Below, in pieces: positions 1,300 through 60,722 of a stretch of DNA of 64,000 nt (position 1 is the first letter of the stretch; each line of letters begins with the position of its first letter). The notes below the pieces were generated by a model that had not been told where the DNA came from, did not search any database, and worked only from the letters and a program-made list of their open reading frames with translations. Source of the DNA: Trichosphaerium sp. ATCC 40318 (lineage: Eukaryota; Protista; Tubulinea); the NCBI GenBank assembly GCA_038496445.1, contig JALMLS010000131.1:1-64000 (forward strand). The letters are read 5' to 3'. A program made the position numbers and the translations under genes.

Positions 1300-1643
1300 C
1301 TAAAACAATTACGCTTATAATATGCAAAAACTGTCGTTTGTAAACCTGCTGTGAGTTTTGGAACCAGAATATTTAAGATCTTTCTCGGTAGTTCAGAAAA
1401 CTATCCTTAAAAAGAAACAATTGACAAAGGTCAGAGGTCAGGTCTTGTTAGCATGACAACTTAGGCTTCAGTAAAACAATCTTGCTACTATACTATGACA
1501 AGAGAATGACTGCCATGTAGTCACTCAAATAAACTGTTAATAACGTAAGCTTAACACATTGTAGAACAGTTACATAATTAAAAAAATTTCATGGTTTTTT
1601 TTTTCGCTTTTCAAGTGGTTTACAAACAACCCAAAACTACTTG

Positions 1644-3243
1644 TTAGTAAATTATCTTATTTAACTCTTTTGCATTTTCTTCTGGGATACTACTATTACT
1701 AAACATACCACTACCAAATTCAAAACCTGCCAATCCGCCTAAAGGACAATCTTTAAACAAAGCAACATCCGAATAAAAAATCAAAACAAAACTGGGACCA
1801 TACCTGGAGCAAGACGAGGAAACACATCAGCGTGCCAATGATGTACATCTTCCATAGAATATTCATTCCCAAAATGATACTTATCAAGGTTTGTAGGTCC
1901 ATTATGAATGACAAAATTATAGTCAGGATCAGACAATGTGTTATAAAGTTTACAAAAAACTTGATGTGTAATAGATCCAAAAGAATCTATTTCAGTCTTA
2001 TTACAATTCAAGAATGAATGTGATGGGTTCAAAGGAGATATCCAAATTTGATAAGGAGTAAGAGCAGCATAAGGTACAAAAGCTACAAAGTGGTCATTTT
2101 GAGCAATAATACGTGATTTATCATCAAGCTCTTTTTTAAGTACGTCCATCATAACACGTCGTTTATGCTTCTTGTAATACATCATTGCATGATGAACACG
2201 ATCACTTAGTTCATGTGGAAGTATAGGTAACCCGACTATTTGTGAATGAGGATGAAAGAGACTTGCACCAGCTTTTCTTCCCTTGAAAAGAAGCGTTAGT
2301 TGATTCTTATTTTTTTCTTCTTTTTTGATCTAAACAAAACTTTCAAGAAGTCATACCTGGTTTTTAAACATCAATACGGATTTAACTAAATCATCCTTGC
2401 TTATTTCTGTTCCTCGTTCATGAAAGGCATGCACAAGATAATGAACTTGATCCTTTTTTGGTGGAACCAATCTTACATTATGTTCTTGGCTTTCAATAAC
2501 AACTACCAAACTATTTAGACACCAAAATGATGTATTGCAATCGGATATGTTTCAAGTTATTTCTACCTGAGTCTGTAAGGTGCTCAGACTGTACAAAACC
2601 GACAAAAACTTTTGTTTCATAAAAAAAGAAATATGTAAAAAAACCCGAGGCTATTTCTCATTACACGTGCCTTCATGATAACCCAAAGCAAGTTGTGGAT
2701 TCTGTTGTATATCTTCTTGTTCTACTAAATGATTATGCGATTCATTCTGGCAGGGTGGATGGACTACGGGGTATTTATTTCGAACTACGCGCAAATTCCA
2801 GTTTGAAGCTTTATTTTTGCGTAAATTAGCGTAAAACCGACAATAAATCAATAACACGCACCAGATTCGCCGTAATAAAGTAGATGTTCTCCAGTTTCCT
2901 TCTCGTTTCCAGGGCAAAAAGGGCACGTTGGCGTGTAGCCCTTAGGTACGCTCTTTGTCATGTTTTTCTAACGGTCTTAGAGGTAAAAATGACTATTTTG
3001 GTAATTCATTGCGCTATTTTCTCTCTAATGGTATACTACTGGTACCTCTACGCGATTAAACTGATTTGGCCTGCCAGAACGGTCTGTAGCGAAAATAACC
3101 CAGTTATTAGTCCCTGGATTATACCTGAAGAAGCTAGAACTCTTTTTGCCGTTAACGTATGAACGTGATAACCGTCTATGCCCATTATTTCGTTCAGCAC
3201 GTATACCACGTCTAGTAGCGCCGTAGGTATACTTTGACAACAT
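1644..3243 (-). CDS. galT: Galactose-1-phosphate uridylyltransferase (GalT/ADP-glucose phosphorylase type, HIT superfamily), multi-exon
   Basis: FRYNP..WVIFATDRSGRP N-terminus, CPFCPGNE Zn motif, GASLFHPHSQI catalytic motif (~2235-2270), HWH, and LAGFEFGSGMF C-terminus. Confidence 0.9.
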
Positions 3244-3466
3244 TTACGCTCGCAACAAAACAATAATTTGACGTTTATGAAACTTATTTAATTCTAACAA
3301 ACTCTCCACTCTATTTGGCTACTACGCCTAGCTTGTCTTCCACATTTATCCCCTCTATTGTTACAGCTATATGATGAGAGCAACAAGCGTTGACACCTTG
3401 CGTGACAGTTTTGGTTTTTCTTCGTTTTAACGAATTGTACGTGATGCTATGGTTCGCTTGGTTCAT

Positions 3467-3972
3467 TCATGATTTGGCGTTTGATGCATTTGTAGGCTCT
3501 AAGAAGTACTTGCTCATTTTAGCCTTTTTTGATCTATTAACAAGTTAGATTTTAACAATACAACCGCGTACGCAGTTTGCCACGCTTGTTCAGGTTTTAT
3601 AGCATGTTTAAACGACGATGTAGCAATCACATTGCAAATATCATTTCTCGTGATTGTTAAGCTGCTAACTCTAATAGACAATCGTAAATGCGCAGTTAAA
3701 CTGCATTTAGGTACTTTTGGTTTGGATGTTTAGCTTTTAGCGCTGTTTTTGCAACGAGCTCTCCGTTTTCAACCATCTCTTCAATAAACGCTTCTAGAAC
3801 TTGTTGAATAACCAACAGGCTGTTCCAGAGTTAAATTGTCAAAACTACTTTCTAAGTTTGTTATTACGCACCTAGGAGCACGAAATCGCGTGGTAGAACC
3901 TCTATTACTAACGTGATGCCTTACAAAGTTTTGTATTTTTTTAGTTGGTGCGTTTCTGCCCTTACTAGACAT
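3467..3972 (-). CDS. Divergent H3-like histone-fold protein (~123 aa, 4 exons)
   Basis: Removing GT-AG introns 3820-3871, 3671-3714 and 3534-3571 gives an open frame: IQNFVR...RFRAPSLLVIQQVLEAFIEEMVENG...LTITRNDI. This aligns by eye to H3 FQRLVR...RFQSSAVMALQEACEAYL...VTIMPKDI. Confidence 0.7.
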
Positions 3973-4128
3973 TACGTTGCGCGGAATAATATGTAGCGTT
4001 AATGTAGTATCAATTTAAACAGTTTAAACTGTACAAAAGCGGTTGACCATCGTTGAATCGGGGAATTAGTAATTTACATTTTTTTTTTCGGATTTTACAG
4101 GTTCACGGCTTGCTTTTGCCACGTTTTA

Positions 4129-4931
4129 CTATACTTGTTTAAGTATCTTAATATTTTGTGTCATGCTCATAACGTGTGGCGGATCGCATCTTTCGATGAA
4201 GTCGGCAGAAGCCAAAGTAACATTATCGCTTAATTGAGAAAAAAGTGGTTGGAAAATAGTCGATTTTTCAGTTTCTGGAATGACTGTGCACTCCTTAACG
4301 CAGTGCTTAGCTATAGATAAAGCAATCTAGGAATGAGTTAGACATACTACAATGCAAAAGTGTTTGTAACAGCGTACCAGGCAATCATTCTTTCGAGATT
4401 GTTTAAGTTTAGTTCCGGAGTAATAAGCTGTCTTGCACTAATCGTTATGAGTATTATAAGCATACTTCGAGCAGTATTGACGTACTATAAGTTGTGTCTG
4501 TTGCATTAAACATACAACAAGCACAGGTCGTTGATTCTGTTTAAGGTTTTCTCCAGATTGTAACAATCTACATATTATGGCATTCAGTGCCTTTTTCTGT
4601 TTCTCTACACTCATCGATTTATCTATATCTGTGTGAAACATTGTGCTAACAAAATCTAGTAGAGGAATATCGTTGAACACATGAACCGGGAAAATAGTTT
4701 TTTTGCCGGGGTAATTATTTAAGGATTTTACAGAAGCTTTCTAAAAAAACACGTGTCAGAGGAAATATGCTAATCGCCAAAATGGCGATTGACTCTTTTT
4801 TTAGTTTACTGCAAAAACCGAAAACTTACTTTTGCTTTCAATTTTTTTAAAACTCCTTTTTGAGCTTCTAGTATATCCTCTAGCCTCTCTATACGATCTA
4901 AATATTCTTTATCATCATTGCTCCTTGACAT
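4129..4931 (-). CDS. Hypothetical protein with N-terminal coiled coil (4 exons)
   Basis: ATG at 4931 and phase-0 GT-AG introns give an open frame to TAG at 4129-4131. No family recognised. Confidence 0.55.
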
Positions 4932-5303
4932 TTTAACAGTCTAATAGGTATGTGACCGGAGTAACGGTTTCTCGTTTAGGTATTGTTAAAGCAAGTAACG
5001 AAAAGCGTTACACAAAATGACTTAACTAACTTAAGTGAAGAGAATATTGTACAGCACACAGCTCGCTATCCTAAGGTTGCACACTGGTTTTGTCCGTACC
5101 ATTAGACGCGTAGGAAATTATTTATCCGATTCTACAAACAAAAAAAACTCAACAAGATACAGTGGACACGATTTTTTAACATGAGTGCAAACAAACATAT
5201 TGAAAGCTTTACAATTTTTTTTATTATTATTTTTTTAGGATATGTTGGTTAGTACACAACTCAAAAGACACTATGCCTTTCGACAAAGATGTAATTATGC
5301 TTG

Positions 5304-8300
5304 TCACTTACGATCCTCGCGACTATTGTACAAGGTTAATTCACAAAATAACAAGAACTATAAAACATACGGAGGACTTGCTGAGCGGTCTCGGCTTGTA
5401 CTTCTGCTACGTGATTTGCTCTCATCCTTATCTCGCCTATCTTTGCTCTTACTACGACTTCTACTTCTTCGCCTACTAGAACGATCGCGATACGACCTGT
5501 CATATCTACCGTGAAAAAGAAAAATAAGTCTACTGTTCACAAAAAAAAAGGTCTAAGAAAAGTATGCCACCCTACCTGTCTCTACCACCTCTTCGCCTAT
5601 CACCACCACGCTCGCGGTCATAACCTCTATCTGAACGATAATCACGGCCCCTTCTTCCGCCATCACGGTACCCTCCACGACCTCTACTGCGATAACCACC
5701 GCCATAGTAGTCTCTAGAACCTTCATACCCTCCTTCGCCACCTTCCATGCCACCTTGGCCATAATAGTAACCTAGAAATTTATTAAGGGGTAAAAAACGC
5801 AAGCTACTAAAGAAAGCACATCTAACGTGGACCAAAGGTACGTTGTCACGTGAGTTCTTTAAAAAATAAATCGTACTGTAGTATTTTTTCCAATATTCTT
5901 CAATGTCTTCTTGTGAGTATTGCTGTTGTTGCTGTCTAGCTCTCTTTAACTCAGCAGGTAGACCGTCATATCCTCCTTCACGTGGGCGCTTTCTAGAGTT
6001 CTGAAAAACCCGTCAAATAACGTAACACTCAACCAAGTAAAACGACTTACATGCTTCCCGTCTCCACCTTGCTTAAATCCACCATCATTATTATACTTTT
6101 TAAAGTCCCCACCGTTTGGTGGACCATTACCATCGTGCCCAGGCTTCTTTATTAAAGACCTTGGGAATTTATCAGAGAAGTTATCTGGAGGCGGTCCTCC
6201 TTGGTTAAAGTGTTGAGGCCTGCCACCGCCACCGCCACCATCATTATCACCCTAAAGATAGGGTGAGTAAACGTTAGTTTAGATTGTATTGTTCGTACAT
6301 AGCTTCCGCCCTCTCCAGGTCTATTGGAGTATGTATTGTTCATAGAAGGCTTGAATCCCTTAATTTGTAGATTAGAAAAAAAAGAGCCAAGCACGTGTTT
6401 CACTTACGTTAGATGTACCAATAGGAACAACAGATTCACCAGTTTCCCAATTAAATCGCTCTGTAGCTCCAAATCCGCGAGCCCATCCAACCTTCATTGG
6501 ACGACCTTCAAGAAGCATATCATGGGTAGCCTATGATTCTATTAAACCAAAAAACCAAACTACAACCCAGGACCCTCCAAGATGTCTCAAAAACAGAACA
6601 ACAAAAAAAATCACGTGAAGAGGAGAAAGAAAAAAAATAGACTCAGTTCAGACTCCTTTCATTGTGTACCTCTCTAGCTTTTTCAGCACCTGCTCGATCA
6701 TAGAAATTACAGAAAGAAATGTGTTTGTGCGCCAAGTACTAAAATTGAGTTTATAAACACAATACCGTACACTACAATGTTTCTTATTAAGAAACAAACA
6801 AATACAAACCTTTACAGATCTTATAGCACCGTGTTGACAAAATATAGCAAACAACATTTCTTGGCTTACAGTAGGTGCCAGATTTCCAACAAATAATGTA
6901 GTACTTAACACTAAAAAGGAGATAATGTTAGTACAGTCTTTGTAACAATAAAAAAAATCAATGTGGCCTACCTTTACGATATCCTGGAGCTACCTGCCAA
7001 CTCCCATCACTCTCGTCTTTTGGTGGAGGTGGTAGAGAGTTCTGCTAAAGATAGTTGTAAGCACTTTTGGTCACCAAACTATTAATGTATGTGGCGTACT
7101 TGTTCTTGCTCTTGTTGATTAAATAATTGTTGTGGAGGTACAAGCATAGCTTTGTTTGACCTATTATAATGTAAGACGTAAAGAATAAAAGCTTAGGTAA
7201 CGTGGTTTTACTGTTTAACATGTCTAGCATTTAAACTTAGTACTTACGCTTGTGAAGCAATAGCTACAGCCTCTTTTGTTCTTCTCTCGGCAGCACTCTG
7301 CTGCTCTTGTCGTCTACGGTTTTCCTCTTCTTCTCGTAGTCTCTGTTGTTCTGCTATTCTACTAGCATCATCTGTTTCCTCATCATAATCGAACAGTGGG
7401 TTTGGCACCTTATTTACTGCAACAGGTTATTAGTGATCAGCGTGAGTTAAGAACTACGCTCTTATATACGAACCTTGTGGTTGTTGAATGGTCTGAATAG
7501 GTTGTGCACTTCCAGGGGGCGTTGAAGGCCGAGGAGGTGTGCGAGAACCTAAGAAATGGTAAGATATCATTCAATTGAAAGAGCAGGCTTACTGTTCAAG
7601 TTTTGGTGTCCGTTCCATCCAGCATTGTTCTGTTGGTATCCTTGTGGCGGTGGGTAGTTAGGCGGAGGTTGTTGATATTGTCTACCAAAGTCTCCTATAT
7701 CCAACAATCAATACAGACCAAAGAAAGTAGAAACTACAAAATAGATACTTACCTTGTTGATTGTAACCTTGTTGATACGAGTTTGGTGCATTTCCACCCA
7801 TATTATTCTGTTGGTATCCTCCTTGATTAGGTGGATAACCACCTTGATTAGGCCACTGGTTTTGTTGTATTTGCTGTGGTGGCATACCACCTCCTTGAAA
7901 ATTGTTTGTTGGAGGTGCTTGTTGAGGTAACTGTACACCTGCATAACAGGTAAGCGATGCATTCTACTGAAACAATACCAACAAAAAGTAAAAAAACTGG
8001 GTTTGACTCCGCAAACCGGCTGAGTATGGGTACGAGCTCAGTTCTGCTATCCTCCCGCTTACCACGATGGAAGCTTTTCCCTGCTCTGTTTCCAGCCTGA
8101 GGCGGTTTACCTCTCATTATCAACCAGGATCTCTCCACCTCCGCGGTGAAACCCCTGTTGGTCGATGGCACGAGAGGACAGAACATCAACACCCGAGGAT
8201 CCCACCTCACATCCGGTCACGTAGTCATTCCCAGTCTTTAAATGGCCTACTGCTAGTAGTTACAGGTATTCGCTACACACCCGCCGATAGAGAAATGCAA

Positions 8301-35136: not shown

Positions 35137-36303
35137 ATGGCTGTAAAACAACAATCGCTAAAATACGAACTTAAATCACTTCAGGATCTACCACCGGAGA
35201 TACTGGCGCATGTGGGAAGGTATTTAAGAAGAAACCAGCGAATCGAAGCAACAACAGTTTGTCACTTGTTTAACAACGTCATTCGCCACAATGTTGGCTT
35301 TTGTCGTATCAATATACAACGCTCAGCAGATCTTCATACCCTAGAAGGCAGTCCTTTGCTAAAGAACACCGAAATAAGCAATCTTAACGGCCACGTGCTA
35401 CGTCCAAAAGATATGATTTGTATACGTGGCGTTCACACTTTCTATACATTTGAGGCACGTGATGGAACTATTCTAGCATTGTTAGGAGGAGAAGACAAAA
35501 TTCACAGTATTTCAATGCCCTATACACACATAACAGATGCTTCATTGAAGGCTCTCAAGTCTGTTCACACAATTGATATTAGTGGGTGTAGGAATATTAC
35601 TGTTGATGGAATAGAAGCGCTTAAAGACGTACATAAGATTACTCTCAGTCCAAAAGCTGAATGGCTTGAACACCTCGGTAATGTACACTCGGTTGTTTTG
35701 TATAAAGCCAAAGATCTACATAGTCTCGAAGCACTATGTAATACCAAACACATAGTGATATATAACAGTGATACTATTACAGATAACAGTTTAGTTCAGT
35801 TGAGTAAACTTGAGCGTCTTGACATTCAACATGTTCCAAATATTTCTGGATCATGTTTCAAGCACTTGGTCAACCTTAAGCACCTCAAACTTTCTGGTCT
35901 TAGTAATATAACGGACGAACATATGGTTCACTTGGTAAATATTCATCACCTAGAGCTTGATAGAGGATCAAAGATAACAGACGCAGGTTTGAAACAATTG
36001 ACTAATCTGAGGCATCTTACGTCATCAAATAAGCTTATTACAGATGAAGGGTTGAAGCACTTGAAGAAGTTAGAGCGTCTCAAGCTCCCAATTGATCATT
36101 TAACCAAACGCATCTGTACTTGCAACATAACAGCTAATTGCCTGACATACCTGACATCGCTTGTGTACCTTGAAACTCATAACTCACTTAACATATCCAA
36201 ACGCAAAAATCAATCACAGCATGACACTGCCAAGGACTTGGGTATTGTTTGGAACATTAAAGGTAAATTTTTGATCCGAACCAAACAAAAACATTACACT
36301 TAG
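35137..36303 (+). CDS. Intronless F-box + leucine-rich repeat protein
   Basis: LQDLPPEILAHVGRYL F-box and ITDxxLxxL LRRs. Confidence 0.85.
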   Translation: MAVKQQSLKYELKSLQDLPPEILAHVGRYLRRNQRIEATTVCHLFNNVIRHNVGFCRINIQRSADLHTLEGSPLLKNTEISNLNGHVLRPKDMICIRGVHTFYTFEARDGTILALLGGEDKIHSISMPYTHITDASLKALKSVHTIDISGCRNITVDGIEALKDVHKITLSPKAEWLEHLGNVHSVVLYKAKDLHSLEALCNTKHIVIYNSDTITDNSLVQLSKLERLDIQHVPNISGSCFKHLVNLKHLKLSGLSNITDEHMVHLVNIHHLELDRGSKITDAGLKQLTNLRHLTSSNKLITDEGLKHLKKLERLKLPIDHLTKRICTCNITANCLTYLTSLVYLETHNSLNISKRKNQSQHDTAKDLGIVWNIKGKFLIRTKQKHYT

Positions 36304-36475: not shown

Positions 36476-37234
36476 TCATGACCACTGCCTTACACCATTT
36501 GAATACATGTACACAGATTTTAACCCTCCATCGTAATACCATAACTTGCACTCTCCTTCTAGCTTGTTATATTTGTAGAACTTCTGCTCATGCTGTTGAC
36601 CATTTGAGTGCCAACTCTTATACGTGCCTTCATACTTCCCATTCATATACTTACATTCCCTTTGCAAGTGACCGTTTTGATGCCAAGTTTTGAGTTCTCC
36701 GTCTGGTTTGCCATTTCTGAAATTGCTCTTTTCTCTGAGTACACCAGTGTTGTACCAGCTAAGAAACTCTCCTTCAAGTTTACTATTGACATATCGACAA
36801 AGAATCCGCAATTGACCAGTAGCGTACCACTTCTTGACTTCTCCTTCGACTAAACCATTGATATAGTGAAGACGCATAGCCAAGCTACTGTTAGGATGAC
36901 TACTCTTGTCATACCATTCTATGTATTCTCCTTCTCGTTTATCATTAACATAGTGACATGTATTATACAAATGACCACTTACAAACCACTCTTTGTACTC
37001 TCCTTCTTGTTTATCTTTAACGTAATAACTCTGTGTATGTAGATTACCATTGGGGTACCATTTTCTACACAACCCATCACGTTTACCATGTGCCCAATGA
37101 CACACTTGACTGTACCCTGAAATTGTTTGTCCCCATTTTCCATGTTTTTTTAGCTCGCTATCAAACCTTGTTGTCATTGCTGTTTGTCTCGATAACAATG
37201 GCCATATTGCGTACAACGCATAGTCTAAATCCAT
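36476..37234 (-). CDS. Intronless MORN-variant (YwqK-like) repeat protein
   Basis: About 24-aa repeats of EGEYKxWYxNGxLxxxxxYxNGK. Confidence 0.85.
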   Translation of the reverse strand: MDLDYALYAIWPLLSRQTAMTTRFDSELKKHGKWGQTISGYSQVCHWAHGKRDGLCRKWYPNGNLHTQSYYVKDKQEGEYKEWFVSGHLYNTCHYVNDKREGEYIEWYDKSSHPNSSLAMRLHYINGLVEGEVKKWYATGQLRILCRYVNSKLEGEFLSWYNTGVLREKSNFRNGKPDGELKTWHQNGHLQRECKYMNGKYEGTYKSWHSNGQQHEQKFYKYNKLEGECKLWYYDGGLKSVYMYSNGVRQWS

Positions 37235-58762: not shown

Positions 58763-60619
58763 TCACTTGAGAAGAGCTTGCTTCGATTTTTCGAAGTTAA
58801 CACTTCCCAAACCTGTTACAGGATCCCAACCACTTGTAGCATTAAACCCATAAGGACAGCAAGTAAACTGTTGCTGCCTACCATAAACTCCTGTACAATG
58901 GTTGTCTCCAACGGTCATATCATTGAACGCTTCAGGTGTCGATTCAGCGATAGCATAGAGCGCTTTGTTTACTGGTCCGAGTACCGGTAAACCTGCTTTA
59001 ATTCTTGCATCTTGTATAATAGCGATCATACCAGCGAAGAGAGGTGCTGATGCAGAGGTTCCACCATTTGGAAGAAATATTCCATTAGTTATTGTATTAA
59101 TGTTATTTGCTACCAGCGCAATGTCAGGGTATGCTCTTTTGTTAGAATTATATGTGCTTGATGGAGGTAATGTATCTACCATATTCTTGAGGTATGTAGA
59201 AACCAGGTTGATCATACCTATTAAAACAAACAATAAGAAAAAGACAAGAAACTCATTCCAAAAACAACTGTTCAGAAAATCGCTTGACGTGCTTCAAGTT
59301 TGTTGTAAAAAAGTTGATAAAGCGAGCTAATGTAATAAGCGTTTACCGTACCAAATAGAAAATCCTCCTCCAGAAGTCGTAGTGGCTTTATAGTTTTCAA
59401 CATTTGTTTGACATGTGCGCTCTTTTAAACCATATTCCGGTCCAAATGTTCCTCCTACTGTGGTCACCCATGGTGATCCAGCAGGATACTGAGGTGCTAA
59501 ACCACAAGCTGATGGATTACCCCGAGCTTCTCTATAGTTAACACCGTCATCTCCAGAAGACGTTACAAAAGTGAATCCTCTAACTGATAACTTGGCAAAC
59601 TCTTGATCTAAACGTTGAGCCAACGATGAAGTTAAATGAGATTCCTGAGGTCCCCATGATATAGAATGAATCAGGGGAGGATCTTCAGCTTCTCCAAGTG
59701 ATAGTAGCCAAGCAAGAACGGGATTACCAACAGGTGAGATAACGTTTGTTGTCCAGTATGTAAAGTTCACCATAGGTGCCATGCCAAGCACCATTTCGAC
59801 GTCAAGAACCGGTTCAGCGCATGCATAGTTAGGACAACCAAAAGTGACGTTATCACCACGGAATTGCGTTACTGGACTTATAGGTAAACCGCTATATTGT
59901 TGAAAAGTTGCCAAGTCAGGTGGGTTGTAATATTCATAAGGAGCTTCGACTTCAAATACAGAAATATTGCTGCTTAACATGTCTGTTGATGATGACTTAT
60001 CAACGTTATAAAGCTTCTTTATGGAATCCATGGACAAGTAAGGACCTGCTGGGAAGCCATCGTTTGTGTATGCAAGGACAGAAAGTTTTTCTTTAAAAAC
60101 TGGGAAATCTGAGACGCCTCCAACCCAGTCCACGTGGTTTCGAAGTTTGTCTGGTATGGAATGTCTGTTACATCTTTGTAAGTGAATTGTCGAACTCGAT
60201 TCGCTTGGTGTACATTCGTAATGGAAGCATGTTGTTTCGAAGAGCGTTTCAACTGTTTTCAATGGTAGCGTTGCTGATATCCATAGTTGATCTGTACTTA
60301 TAGCGTCTATTGTTGCTCCTACCTTTTGTAGGTACGATACAGTTATTTTTGAGCCAATTGTGTTCTTTGTGGCCTCTAGGACTTGCTCCTTTGTCCAGTA
60401 TGACCCATACAATGAAGACTTTGGGTCTGAAACCACTTTCAACGAATCGTATATTTTTGCTACATCTTGTCCGTTTTTGACGCCTACAACTATCTTATGT
60501 GGTATGTTTTGAGCGCTTGAGAGAGTTTGAGAAGTACAGAATGATGGTACAAACGATTTTGTTTGTACAAGCGTTAACAGCAGCACAAATAAGATTAAAA
60601 TAAGGCACTTGTGTACCAT
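58763..60619 (-). CDS. Sedolisin/tripeptidyl-peptidase 1-like S53 protease (signal peptide + prodomain), one intron
   Basis: VSDPKSSLYGSYWT prodomain, EPVLDVE, SSGDDG, YPAGSPWVTTVGGT, RAYPDIA, GGTSASAP, GWDPVTGLGS. Confidence 0.93.
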
Positions 60620-60722
60620 GAGCTTATTGACGTTTCGTTGTTGTGGTACTTTAAGTTTAAAGGCCAAATGAACTTAGCTTAACGTTGGCAACGAAAATCG
60701 ATAAAGAAAAGTGGATCATCGA

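What the first reader, a model, noticed from the sequence alone, without database searches (positions are those of the whole stretch)
3467..3972. Hidden tail-less H3-like histone-fold gene
The spliced product is MSSKGRNAPTKKIQNFVRHHVSNRGSTTRFRAPSLLVIQQVLEAFIEEMVENGELVAKTALKAKHPNQKVSSLTITRNDICNVIATSSFKHAIKPEQAWQTASKKAKMSKYFLEPTNASNAKS. It keeps H3-type alpha1-L1-alpha2 spacing (VR-x10-RF) and TI..DI. It lacks the N-terminal tail and alphaN helix, has a ~11-aa basic insertion in loop 2, and has a C-terminal extension. It could be a novel histone variant or a divergent CENP-S/T/W/X, TAF or NF-Y-type subunit.
Basis: partly seen in the sequence, partly recalled or inferred. Interest (0 to 1): 0.7.

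Follow-up and report, generated by a model that had tools for sequence, protein, structure and literature searches.

The report
Expressed tail-less H3-like small protein gene
This amoeba transcribes and splices a small gene whose 123-residue basic protein resembles the first half of the histone H3 core well beyond chance but has no histone tail, and neither a complete histone fold nor its family could be shown here.

Summary
All three junctions appear in assembled cDNA contigs of four runs from one sample; one run retains intron 3.

I built the joined protein only inside scripts, from window.fa. There it matches a histone H3 profile ungapped over residues 13-59 (alpha1-L1-alpha2): 14.3 bits, reached by 0 of 20,000 shuffles, against 7.1 bits for the next non-histone natural ORF. 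Viral H4-, H2A- and H2B-like profiles, a CENP-S profile and a CENP-T fold give nothing. The second half is only weakly supported. It has one L2/alpha3-type motif (p about 3e-4) and a marginal match to archaeal histones (p about 0.01). The H3 profile gives it no support.

Searches with exons 2 and 3 found no relatives, but this organism is poorly sampled.

Most likely this is a lineage-specific, H3-derived, non-nucleosomal histone-fold protein. CENP-W, CENP-X and TAF families were not tested. Earlier notes of this scan describe other H3-derived modules in this genome, but not this gene.

The parts
3467..3972 (-). Coding region of the gene, start codon to stop codon: 4 exons, 3 introns, 123 codons plus stop
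   Evidence: all junctions seen in cDNA contigs
3973..4032 (-). 5' UTR. The mRNA 5' end is at about 4032, marked by a template-switch oligo at the end of an X3 contig. I saw no upstream ATG.
   Evidence: table 7; sequence read
3872..3972 (-). Exon 1: residues 1-33 plus 2 nt. Short basic N-terminus, putative alpha1 and loop 1 (V17 R18 ... R29 F30).
3820..3871 (-). Intron 1, 52 nt, GT..AG
   Evidence: joint 3819|3872 in 4 of 4 runs
3715..3819 (-). Exon 2: putative alpha2. It is the only single exon with a family hit: PF00125, E 0.16, profile positions 81-105.
3671..3714 (-). Intron 2, 44 nt, GT..AG
   Evidence: joint 3670|3715 in 4 of 4 runs
3572..3670 (-). Exon 3: long loop 2, putative alpha3, start of the C-terminal extension
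3534..3571 (-). Intron 3, 38 nt, GT..AG. Retained in the contig of run X1, which would give a 120-aa isoform with a different C-terminus.
   Evidence: joint 3533|3572 in 3 of 4 runs; X1 contig runs unbroken 3312-3670
3467..3533 (-). Exon 4: basic C-terminal tail and TGA stop
3744..3936 (-). H3-like block, residues 13-59 (alpha1-L1-alpha2; the range includes intron 1). It aligns ungapped to H3 F67-H113; residue numbers follow canonical H3, my knowledge.
3628..3657 (-). Residues 74-83: the loop 2/alpha3-type motif T-[ILV]-x3-D-[ILV]-x2-[AVLI]
   Evidence: 56 of 200,000 shuffles and 7 hits in 222,537 decoy residues. Aligned to the TVxxxDI of archaeal histones and the TIxxxDI of H3.
3470..3612 (-). 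Residues 89-123: C-terminal extension, net charge +5, no detectable similarity to anything (the range includes intron 3)
3275..3466 (-). 3' UTR. cDNA contigs end at 3275-3312. It carries three differences from the window (3369, 3408, 3451), while the 506-nt gene body carries none.
   Evidence: tables 3, 4, 8

Best explanation
This is a real, transcribed and spliced gene for a 123-residue basic protein. Its first half (residues 13-59) descends from, or is built like, the alpha1-loop1-alpha2 part of histone H3. I infer that it completes a histone fold through an enlarged loop 2 and a short alpha3 (the TITRNDI segment), followed by a basic extension of about 35 residues. It has no N-terminal tail and no alphaN helix, so it cannot act as a nucleosomal H3 that holds the DNA ends or carries tail marks. 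The most likely mechanism, inferred and not shown, is the usual histone-fold handshake with an H4-like partner. It keeps the equivalents of H3 R72, R83 and F84 (R18, R29, F30); by my knowledge of the nucleosome these H3 arginines lie at the alpha1/L1 DNA-contact site. The positions that form the H3-H3' four-helix bundle are not kept: T59 stands where H113 would under the H3 alignment, and alpha3 is unlike H3. If that alignment is right, the protein would bind a partner without building an (H3-H4)2-type tetramer. It would then be a non-nucleosomal histone-fold subunit or a 'capping' or sequestering partner, in a genome that earlier scan notes describe as rich in co-opted histone pieces.
For: Gene and splicing. 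H3-specific similarity of the joined model: 14.3 bits against a profile of 32 H3 sequences, with 0 of 20,000 shuffles reaching it (best 11.7) and the reversed sequence at 0.9; ungapped alignment 13-59. An independent, divergent profile of giant-virus fused H3 domains gives 8.8 bits, reached by 3 of 20,000 shuffles, while the H2A and H2B domains of the same fusion proteins give p 0.04 and 0.76 and viral H4 gives p 0.055. Among 1,410 natural decoy ORFs only a viral H3-like ORF scores higher, and the next non-histone scores 7.1. hhalign gives P 0.0011 for H3 against 0.12-0.68 for H4, H2A and H2B. Exon 2 by reference hits only PF00125 among 24,736 Pfam models, in the same register as true H3 alpha2 pieces, and 34-aa alpha2 pieces proved family-diagnostic. 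Second half: the motif at residue 74 has p about 3e-4; the archaeal histone profile aligns residues 42-80 colinearly at 4.6 bits, reached by 217 of 20,000 shuffles. Constraint: the four runs show no difference in the 506-nt gene body but three in the 192-nt 3' UTR and one or two just upstream. Analogy: archaeal 'capstone' histones lose tetramerisation through change at His49 (PMC7776873); I take His49 to be the equivalent of H3 H113.
Against: The second half is weak. Residues 60-123 alone score -0.3 bits against H3 (4,570 of 5,000 shuffles do as well), and hhalign gains nothing from it. True histone-fold families (H3, viral H4, CENP-S, CENP-T) score 18-32 bits against the archaeal histone profile; this protein scores only 4.6. 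Exon 1 alone is not significant. Across a whole proteome of an assumed 20,000 proteins, the H3 match alone would have E of about 0.03 (nominal) to 0.16 (my extrapolation from the shuffles), which is borderline. No fold prediction and no profile search of the joined protein was possible. The two alignments disagree on which residue is the H113 equivalent (T59 or H65). No partner, localisation or relative is known.
Confidence: 0.5

Rival explanations
1. It is a strongly diverged orthologue of a known small histone-fold subunit that I could not test: CENP-W, CENP-X, or a TAF such as TAF9, TAF11 or TAF13. The H3 resemblance would then only reflect the shared fold.
For: Size, basic charge and the lack of a tail fit such subunits (my knowledge). 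These families evolve fast and are often missed; CENP-T-W has not been identified in Dictyostelium (PMC9252888). Histone-fold families cross-hit one another in Pfam. The organism is poorly sampled, with a best hit of 54% identity even for a sedolisin, so orphan status means little.
Against: The match is specific to H3. CENP-S members reach at most 11.0 bits and CENP-T 10.3 bits against the same H3 profile, against 14.3 here. Exon 2 hits no TAF or CENP model in Pfam even at E up to 10, although equivalent 34-aa pieces of CENP-S and CENP-T are recognised at E 1e-10 or better. CENP-S and CENP-T themselves are excluded.
Confidence: 0.2
2. Only a half fold is present: an H3-derived alpha1-L1-alpha2 module on a small helical protein that does not form a canonical histone fold. 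It may be related to the H3-like segments that earlier notes report inside F-box/ankyrin genes of this genome, and would act as a histone mimic or binding surface.
For: All statistically solid similarity lies in residues 13-59. Earlier unchecked scan notes describe 'half of the H3 core' in other genes of this genome. The archaeal-profile score is far below that of true folds.
Against: The T-I-x3-D-I-x2-V motif sits after alpha2 in the right order and is rare by chance. Two independent profiles place it on their own L2/alpha3. A lone alpha1-L1-alpha2 would expose a long hydrophobic helix face (inference).
Confidence: 0.2
3. The H3 resemblance is chance. The gene encodes a small basic orphan protein of unrelated fold.
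For: At proteome scale the H3 match alone is borderline, E about 0.03-0.16 (the assumed 20,000 proteins and the extrapolation are mine). Nothing reaches a Pfam gathering score. No relatives were found.
Against: Two independent H3 profiles, Pfam PF00125 on exon 2 and the L2/alpha3 motif all agree, in colinear order. Natural decoys stay at 7.1 bits or below.
Confidence: 0.1

Closest known systems
Histone H3 / CenH3 (Pfam PF00125)
   Same: Ungapped alpha1-L1-alpha2 register. Equivalents of V71-R72, R83-F84, Q93, E97-A98 and Y99 (as F) are kept, and a TI-x3-DI motif follows alpha2.
   Different: No N-terminal tail and no alphaN. Loop 2 is 4-10 residues longer. Alpha3 and the H3-H3' interface residues are not kept. 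There is a 35-residue basic C-terminal extension. Loop 1 is not lengthened as in many CenH3s (my knowledge). The score is far below the family level: 14 bits against about 240.
CENP-S / MHF1 (PF15630)
   Same: Same architecture on paper: a small protein with no tail, an H3-like member of a histone-fold pair, and a basic C-terminal extension. CENP-S is reported in Amoebozoa (PMC9252888).
   Different: No sequence similarity: 1.6 bits against a profile of 85 CENP-S proteins, p 0.12, with a non-colinear alignment. Exon 2 gives no PF15630 or PF15511 hit, whereas CENP-S alpha2 pieces do. It lacks the D-L-E-x-F-A-R-H-A motif.
Archaeal histones, including 'capstone' paralogues (PMC7776873)
   Same: A tail-less minimal histone fold. 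There is a marginal colinear match over alpha2-L2-alpha3. Possible loss of the tetramerisation histidine, as in capstones.
   Different: The score is only 4.6 bits, against 18-32 for eukaryotic histone-fold families. This is a eukaryotic gene with introns, and its first half is H3-like rather than archaeal-like.
Tail-less H3-like ORF of a giant-virus MAG (L008:4151-4387:-)
   Same: A short stand-alone H3-like fold without tail or alphaN: 79 aa, 22.6 bits against the H3 profile, PF00125 E 0.006.
   Different: Viral, and much closer to H3 in L2/alpha3. I did not test it for a specific relation to the window gene.

Membership tests
Histone fold (generic) | alpha1 - loop 1 - long alpha2, in the correct spacing | tested here: met
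   Ungapped match of residues 13-59 to H3 alpha1-L1-alpha2: 14.3 bits, 0 of 20,000 shuffles. PF00125 on exon 2 in the same register.
Histone fold (generic) | loop 2 - alpha3 completing the helix-strand-helix motif | tested here: inconclusive
   Motif at residues 74-83, p about 3e-4. Archaeal profile p about 0.011. The H3 profile gives nothing. A crude helix-propensity scan does not call alpha3.
Histone fold (generic) | three-dimensional fold and handshake dimer | not testable with these tools
Histone H3 / CenH3 | N-terminal tail and alphaN helix ahead of alpha1 | tested here: not met
   alpha1 begins about residue 10-13. The first AUG of the mRNA is at 3972.
Histone H3 / CenH3 | conserved L2-alpha3 and the H3-H3' four-helix-bundle residues | tested here: not met
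   Residues 60-123 score -0.3 bits against H3. T59 stands at the H113 position in the H3 alignment.
Histone H3 / CenH3 | Pfam PF00125 above the gathering score | tested here: not met
   By exon only: exon 2 scores 12.6 bits against a cut-off of 26.4; exons 1, 3 and 4 give no PF00125 hit. The joined protein was not scanned.
CENP-S / MHF1 | match to the CENP-S profile (PF15630) | tested here: not met
   Local profile of 85 members: 1.6 bits, reached by 2,394 of 20,000 shuffles. No PF15630 hit on exon 2, although control alpha2 pieces hit at E 1e-10 to 1e-12. The profile is biased towards fungi.
CENP-T | long N-terminal region plus a PF15511 histone fold | tested here: not met
   No N-terminal region. 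phmmer against a Pfam-confirmed CENP-T fold (L069) gives -1.6 bits. No PF15511 hit on exon 2. Only one CENP-T sequence was at hand.
NF-Y / NC2 / archaeal-type (PF00808) | match to an archaeal/CBF-type histone profile | tested here: not met
   4.6 bits against a profile of 79 archaeal histones, where H3, viral H4, CENP-S and CENP-T reach 18-32. -0.2 bits against the viral H2B-like domain, which itself hits PF00808.
CENP-W, CENP-X, TAF9/11/13 and other TAF folds | match to the family profile | not tested
   No reference sequences could be fetched and the joined protein could not be scanned. By exon, no such Pfam family appears at E up to 10.

The most novel reading that the evidence does not exclude
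A new class of gene-encoded, tail-less and alphaN-less H3 derivative: a stand-alone 'capping' H3-like protein that pairs with H4 (or an H4-like protein) but cannot tetramerise or hold the nucleosomal DNA ends. It would be part of an amoeba-specific expansion of co-opted histone modules.
Probability: 0.15. Interest if true: 0.75.

Novelty: new variant of a known kind. Interest (0 to 1): 0.5.

Why it matters
As far as I know, eukaryotic H3 relatives are either nucleosomal (H3, CenH3) or belong to a few old non-nucleosomal families such as CENP-S/T and TAFs. A gene-encoded H3 derivative without tail or alphaN, and with a rebuilt second half, would be a natural experiment. It would show which parts of H3 are needed for pairing, for DNA contact and for tetramer formation. 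It might also show how this amoeba uses histone-like pieces outside nucleosomes. If it turns out to be a diverged CENP-W, CENP-X or TAF, it would instead fill a gap in the poorly known kinetochore or transcription machinery of amoebae.

Tried and rejected
Searches by single exon, by reference, were all blank:
- Pfam on exons 1, 3 and 4.
- PDB sequence search with exons 1, 2 and 3.
- Word-index protein search with the exon-3 ORF. It can only see proteins of 30-96 aa.
- Exhaustive HMMER search of 1.84 billion representatives with exon 2. A self-match would have had E 4e-12, so no representative reaches about 31 bits on alpha2.
- ESM Atlas with exon 2.
- Metagenome scan with the exon-3 ORF.
- Findings look-up by sequence.
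- Paralogue search in the window.

Readings tested and rejected: CENP-S, CENP-T, NF-Y/archaeal-type as a family, and H4-, H2A- or H2B-likeness.

Pfam does not recognise the upstream neighbour, and I found nothing that links it to this gene.

Left out: every search, family scan, structure prediction or fold search with the joined 123-aa protein. It has no reference, and the operators ruled that it must not be typed. The organism could not be named; run and organism names were coded, and the closest database protein to a window gene is only 54% identical.

Full report
GENE MODEL. The window looks eukaryotic, with 35-41% G+C and very short introns. On the minus strand an ATG at 3972 opens a frame interrupted by three GT..AG introns: 3871-3820 (52 nt), 3714-3671 (44 nt) and 3571-3534 (38 nt). 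The frame ends at TGA 3469-3467. I joined the four blocks in a script that reads window.fa.

EXPRESSION. The look-up of sequencing runs found four small runs of one sample and study, not labelled as RNA. Their Logan contigs, laid on 1500-6500, skip exactly 3820-3871 and 3671-3714 in all four runs. They skip 3534-3571 in three runs, and X1 keeps intron 3, which predicts a 120-residue isoform. Contig ends carry the SMART template-switch oligo, so these libraries are cDNA. One such end at 4032 marks the 5' end of the mRNA, and 3972 is then the first AUG by my reading. Contigs end at 3275-3312, giving a 3' UTR of about 155-190 nt. The runs differ from the window at 3369, 3408 and 3451 (3' UTR) and at 4021 and 4068 (the 5' UTR and just upstream of the mRNA start), but nowhere in the 506-nt gene body. 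If I apply the UTR rate (four differences in 252 nt, leaving out 4068) to the CDS, about six differences would be expected. That gives P about 0.003 by my own estimate and is a mild sign of constraint.

SEARCHES BY EXON. Each exon was searched by reference.
- Pfam finds one family for exon 2: PF00125 (core histone), E 0.16, profile positions 81-105. It finds no histone-fold family for the other exons.
- PDB sequence searches of exons 1-3 are blank, apart from one chance-level hit.
- The word search with the exon-3 ORF, the exhaustive search of 1.84 billion representatives with exon 2, the Atlas and a metagenome scan are all blank.
- A local control shows that exon 2 would have found its own protein at E 4e-12 in that library. 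So no representative reaches about 31 bits on alpha2.
- This says little about novelty. A sedolisin gene of the same window has a best database hit of only 54% identity, so the lineage is poorly sampled. Earlier scan notes call the organism an amoeba, one of them a marine amoeba.

REFERENCE FAMILIES AND LOCAL TESTS. To test the fold claim I fetched reference families by motif scans and compared them with the joined model inside scripts.
- IMG/VR gave 58 loci with H3 genes, giant-virus H2B-H2A-H3 fusion proteins and a viral H4-like family.
- Against a profile of 32 H3 sequences the model scores 14.3 bits over residues 13-59, ungapped, on H3 alpha1-L1-alpha2. This is H3 F67-H113 in canonical numbering, which is my knowledge. 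V17-R18 and R29-F30 fall on V71-R72 and R83-F84.
- None of 20,000 composition-preserving shuffles reaches this score (best 11.7), and the reversed sequence scores 0.9.
- A second, divergent profile made from the H3 domains of the viral fusions gives 8.8 bits, reached by 3 of 20,000 shuffles. The H2A and H2B domains of the same proteins give p 0.04 and 0.76, and the viral H4 family gives p 0.055.
- hhalign agrees: P 0.0011 for H3 against 0.12-0.68 for the others.
- Among 1,410 natural ORFs from the window and the viral loci, only a viral H3-like ORF scores higher. The next scores 7.1 bits.
- Exon 2 alone carries 6.5 bits (0 of 5,000 shuffles). Exon 1 adds its share only when contiguous with exon 2.
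- A calibration shows that 34-residue alpha2 pieces are family-diagnostic in Pfam. H3 pieces hit only PF00125. CENP-S pieces hit PF15630 and PF15511. A CENP-T piece hits PF15511 first. The window's exon 2 hits only PF00125, in the H3 register.

THE SECOND HALF IS THE WEAK POINT.
- Residues 60-123 alone score -0.3 bits against H3.
But the score is the same with or without that part, 26.0 against 25.6.
- The generic loop-2/alpha3 motif T-[ILV]-x3-D-[ILV]-x2-[AVLI] occurs once, at residue 74. It appears in 56 of 200,000 shuffles of residues 60-123, and 7 times in 222,537 decoy residues. It is present in 17 of 32 H3 and 11 of 13 viral H4-like sequences.
- A profile of 79 archaeal histones aligns residues 42-80 colinearly. 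AKHPNQK falls on ARHAGRK, a 4-residue insertion follows, and TITRNDI falls on TVKAEDI. The score is only 4.6 bits, reached by 217 of 20,000 shuffles; hhalign gives P 0.01.
- True histone-fold families score 18-32 bits against that same profile.
- A complete fold is therefore plausible but not shown. The two alignments also disagree on whether T59 or H65 is the equivalent of the tetramerisation histidine.

RIVAL FAMILIES.
- CENP-S has the most similar architecture. A motif scan of metagenomes gave CENP-S genes, confirmed by Pfam, and one CENP-T fold (L069).
- An alignment of these genes retrieved 1,603 CENP-S proteins, of which 120 were listed.
- A profile of 85 of them gives the model 1.6 bits (p 0.12) with a non-colinear alignment. 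The CENP-T fold gives -1.6 bits.
- In the cross-family matrix the model is closer to the H3 profile (14.3 bits) than CENP-S (at most 11.0) or CENP-T (10.3) are.
- CENP-S, CENP-T and NF-Y/archaeal-type membership are therefore not supported. CENP-W, CENP-X and TAFs remain untested for lack of reference sequences. In Dictyostelium, CENP-S and CENP-X are reported but CENP-T-W has not been identified (PMC9252888).

CAVEAT ON SIGNIFICANCE. For one pre-named family and one protein the H3 match is strong. Its nominal P is 1.4e-6, or about 8e-6 by my extrapolation from the shuffles. Over an assumed proteome of 20,000 it would be E 0.03-0.16. The colinear motif, the second H3 profile and the Pfam hit on exon 2 raise confidence, but they do not replace a fold prediction.

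CONTEXT. Earlier, unchecked notes of this scan describe many co-opted histone pieces in this genome: H3-tail copies on F-box and NLR-like proteins, F-box/ankyrin genes with 'half of the H3 core', an H3 variant with a folded head, and H4 and H2B copies inside scaffold proteins. None concerns this gene and I could not read those sequences. They make a lineage-specific H3 derivative more plausible, and they suggest a direct comparison as a next step.

MECHANISM (inferred).
- The protein probably forms a handshake dimer with an H4-like partner.
- It keeps the arginines that correspond to H3 R72 and R83; in H3 these lie at the alpha1/L1 DNA-contact site (my knowledge of the nucleosome).
- It lacks the tail and alphaN, and probably the H3-H3' interface.
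- So it would not build a nucleosome. It would act as a non-nucleosomal histone-fold subunit or as a cap, by analogy with the archaeal 'capstone' histones that lose tetramerisation through change at His49 (PMC7776873).

VERDICT. I give 0.5 to the main reading, 0.2 to an untested known family, 0.2 to a half-fold mimic and 0.1 to chance. On present evidence the protein is a new variant of a known kind. Interest is moderate until a fold and a partner are shown.

Noticed in passing
window 4050-4992 (-): The upstream neighbour is a 204-aa protein with a coiled-coil-looking N-terminus that Pfam does not recognise. It shows two splice forms (4740|4830 and 4622|4830). Its 3' end (about 4050) lies only about 20 nt from the 5' end of the H3-like gene (about 4032), and one X1 contig runs across both genes.
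   Followed up: partly
window 2845-3330 (+): One run (X3) shows a plus-strand transcript that starts at 2845 (template-switch oligo). It has two joints, 2921|2980 and 3067|3110, that read GC..AG when shifted by one base. It runs antisense to minus-strand ORFs 3025-3243 and 2848-2961 and converges on the 3' end of the H3-like gene. The contig differs from the window by several substitutions and indels, so it may be another allele or strain.
   Followed up: no
window 3534-3571: Intron 3 is retained in the contig of run X1. This would replace the last 22 residues with 19 others, giving a 120-aa isoform.
   Followed up: partly
L008:4151-4387 (-): A giant-virus MAG encodes a 79-aa H3-like ORF with no tail and no alphaN (22.6 bits against the H3 profile; PF00125 E 0.006). 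It lies about 1.4 kb from the MAG's full-length H3 at 5837-6244.
   Followed up: partly
L004:4959-6083 (-) and about ten other IMG/VR loci (e.g. L014, L016, L018, L034, L035, L038, L044): Single ORFs of 364-423 aa fuse H2B-like, H2A-like and H3-like domains. A separate H4-like ORF of about 85 aa lies near some of them (seen in L018).
   Followed up: partly
runs X1-X4: The four runs are not on record as RNA, yet their contigs are spliced and end in the SMART template-switch oligo. They are small cDNA libraries of one sample.
   Followed up: yes
window 35137-36300 (+), 36479-37234 (-), 59330-60667 (-): An F-box-like/LRR gene, a MORN-repeat gene and a sedolisin (pro-kumamolisin domain) gene. The best database relative of the sedolisin is only 54% identical, which shows how poorly this lineage is sampled.
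   Followed up: partly
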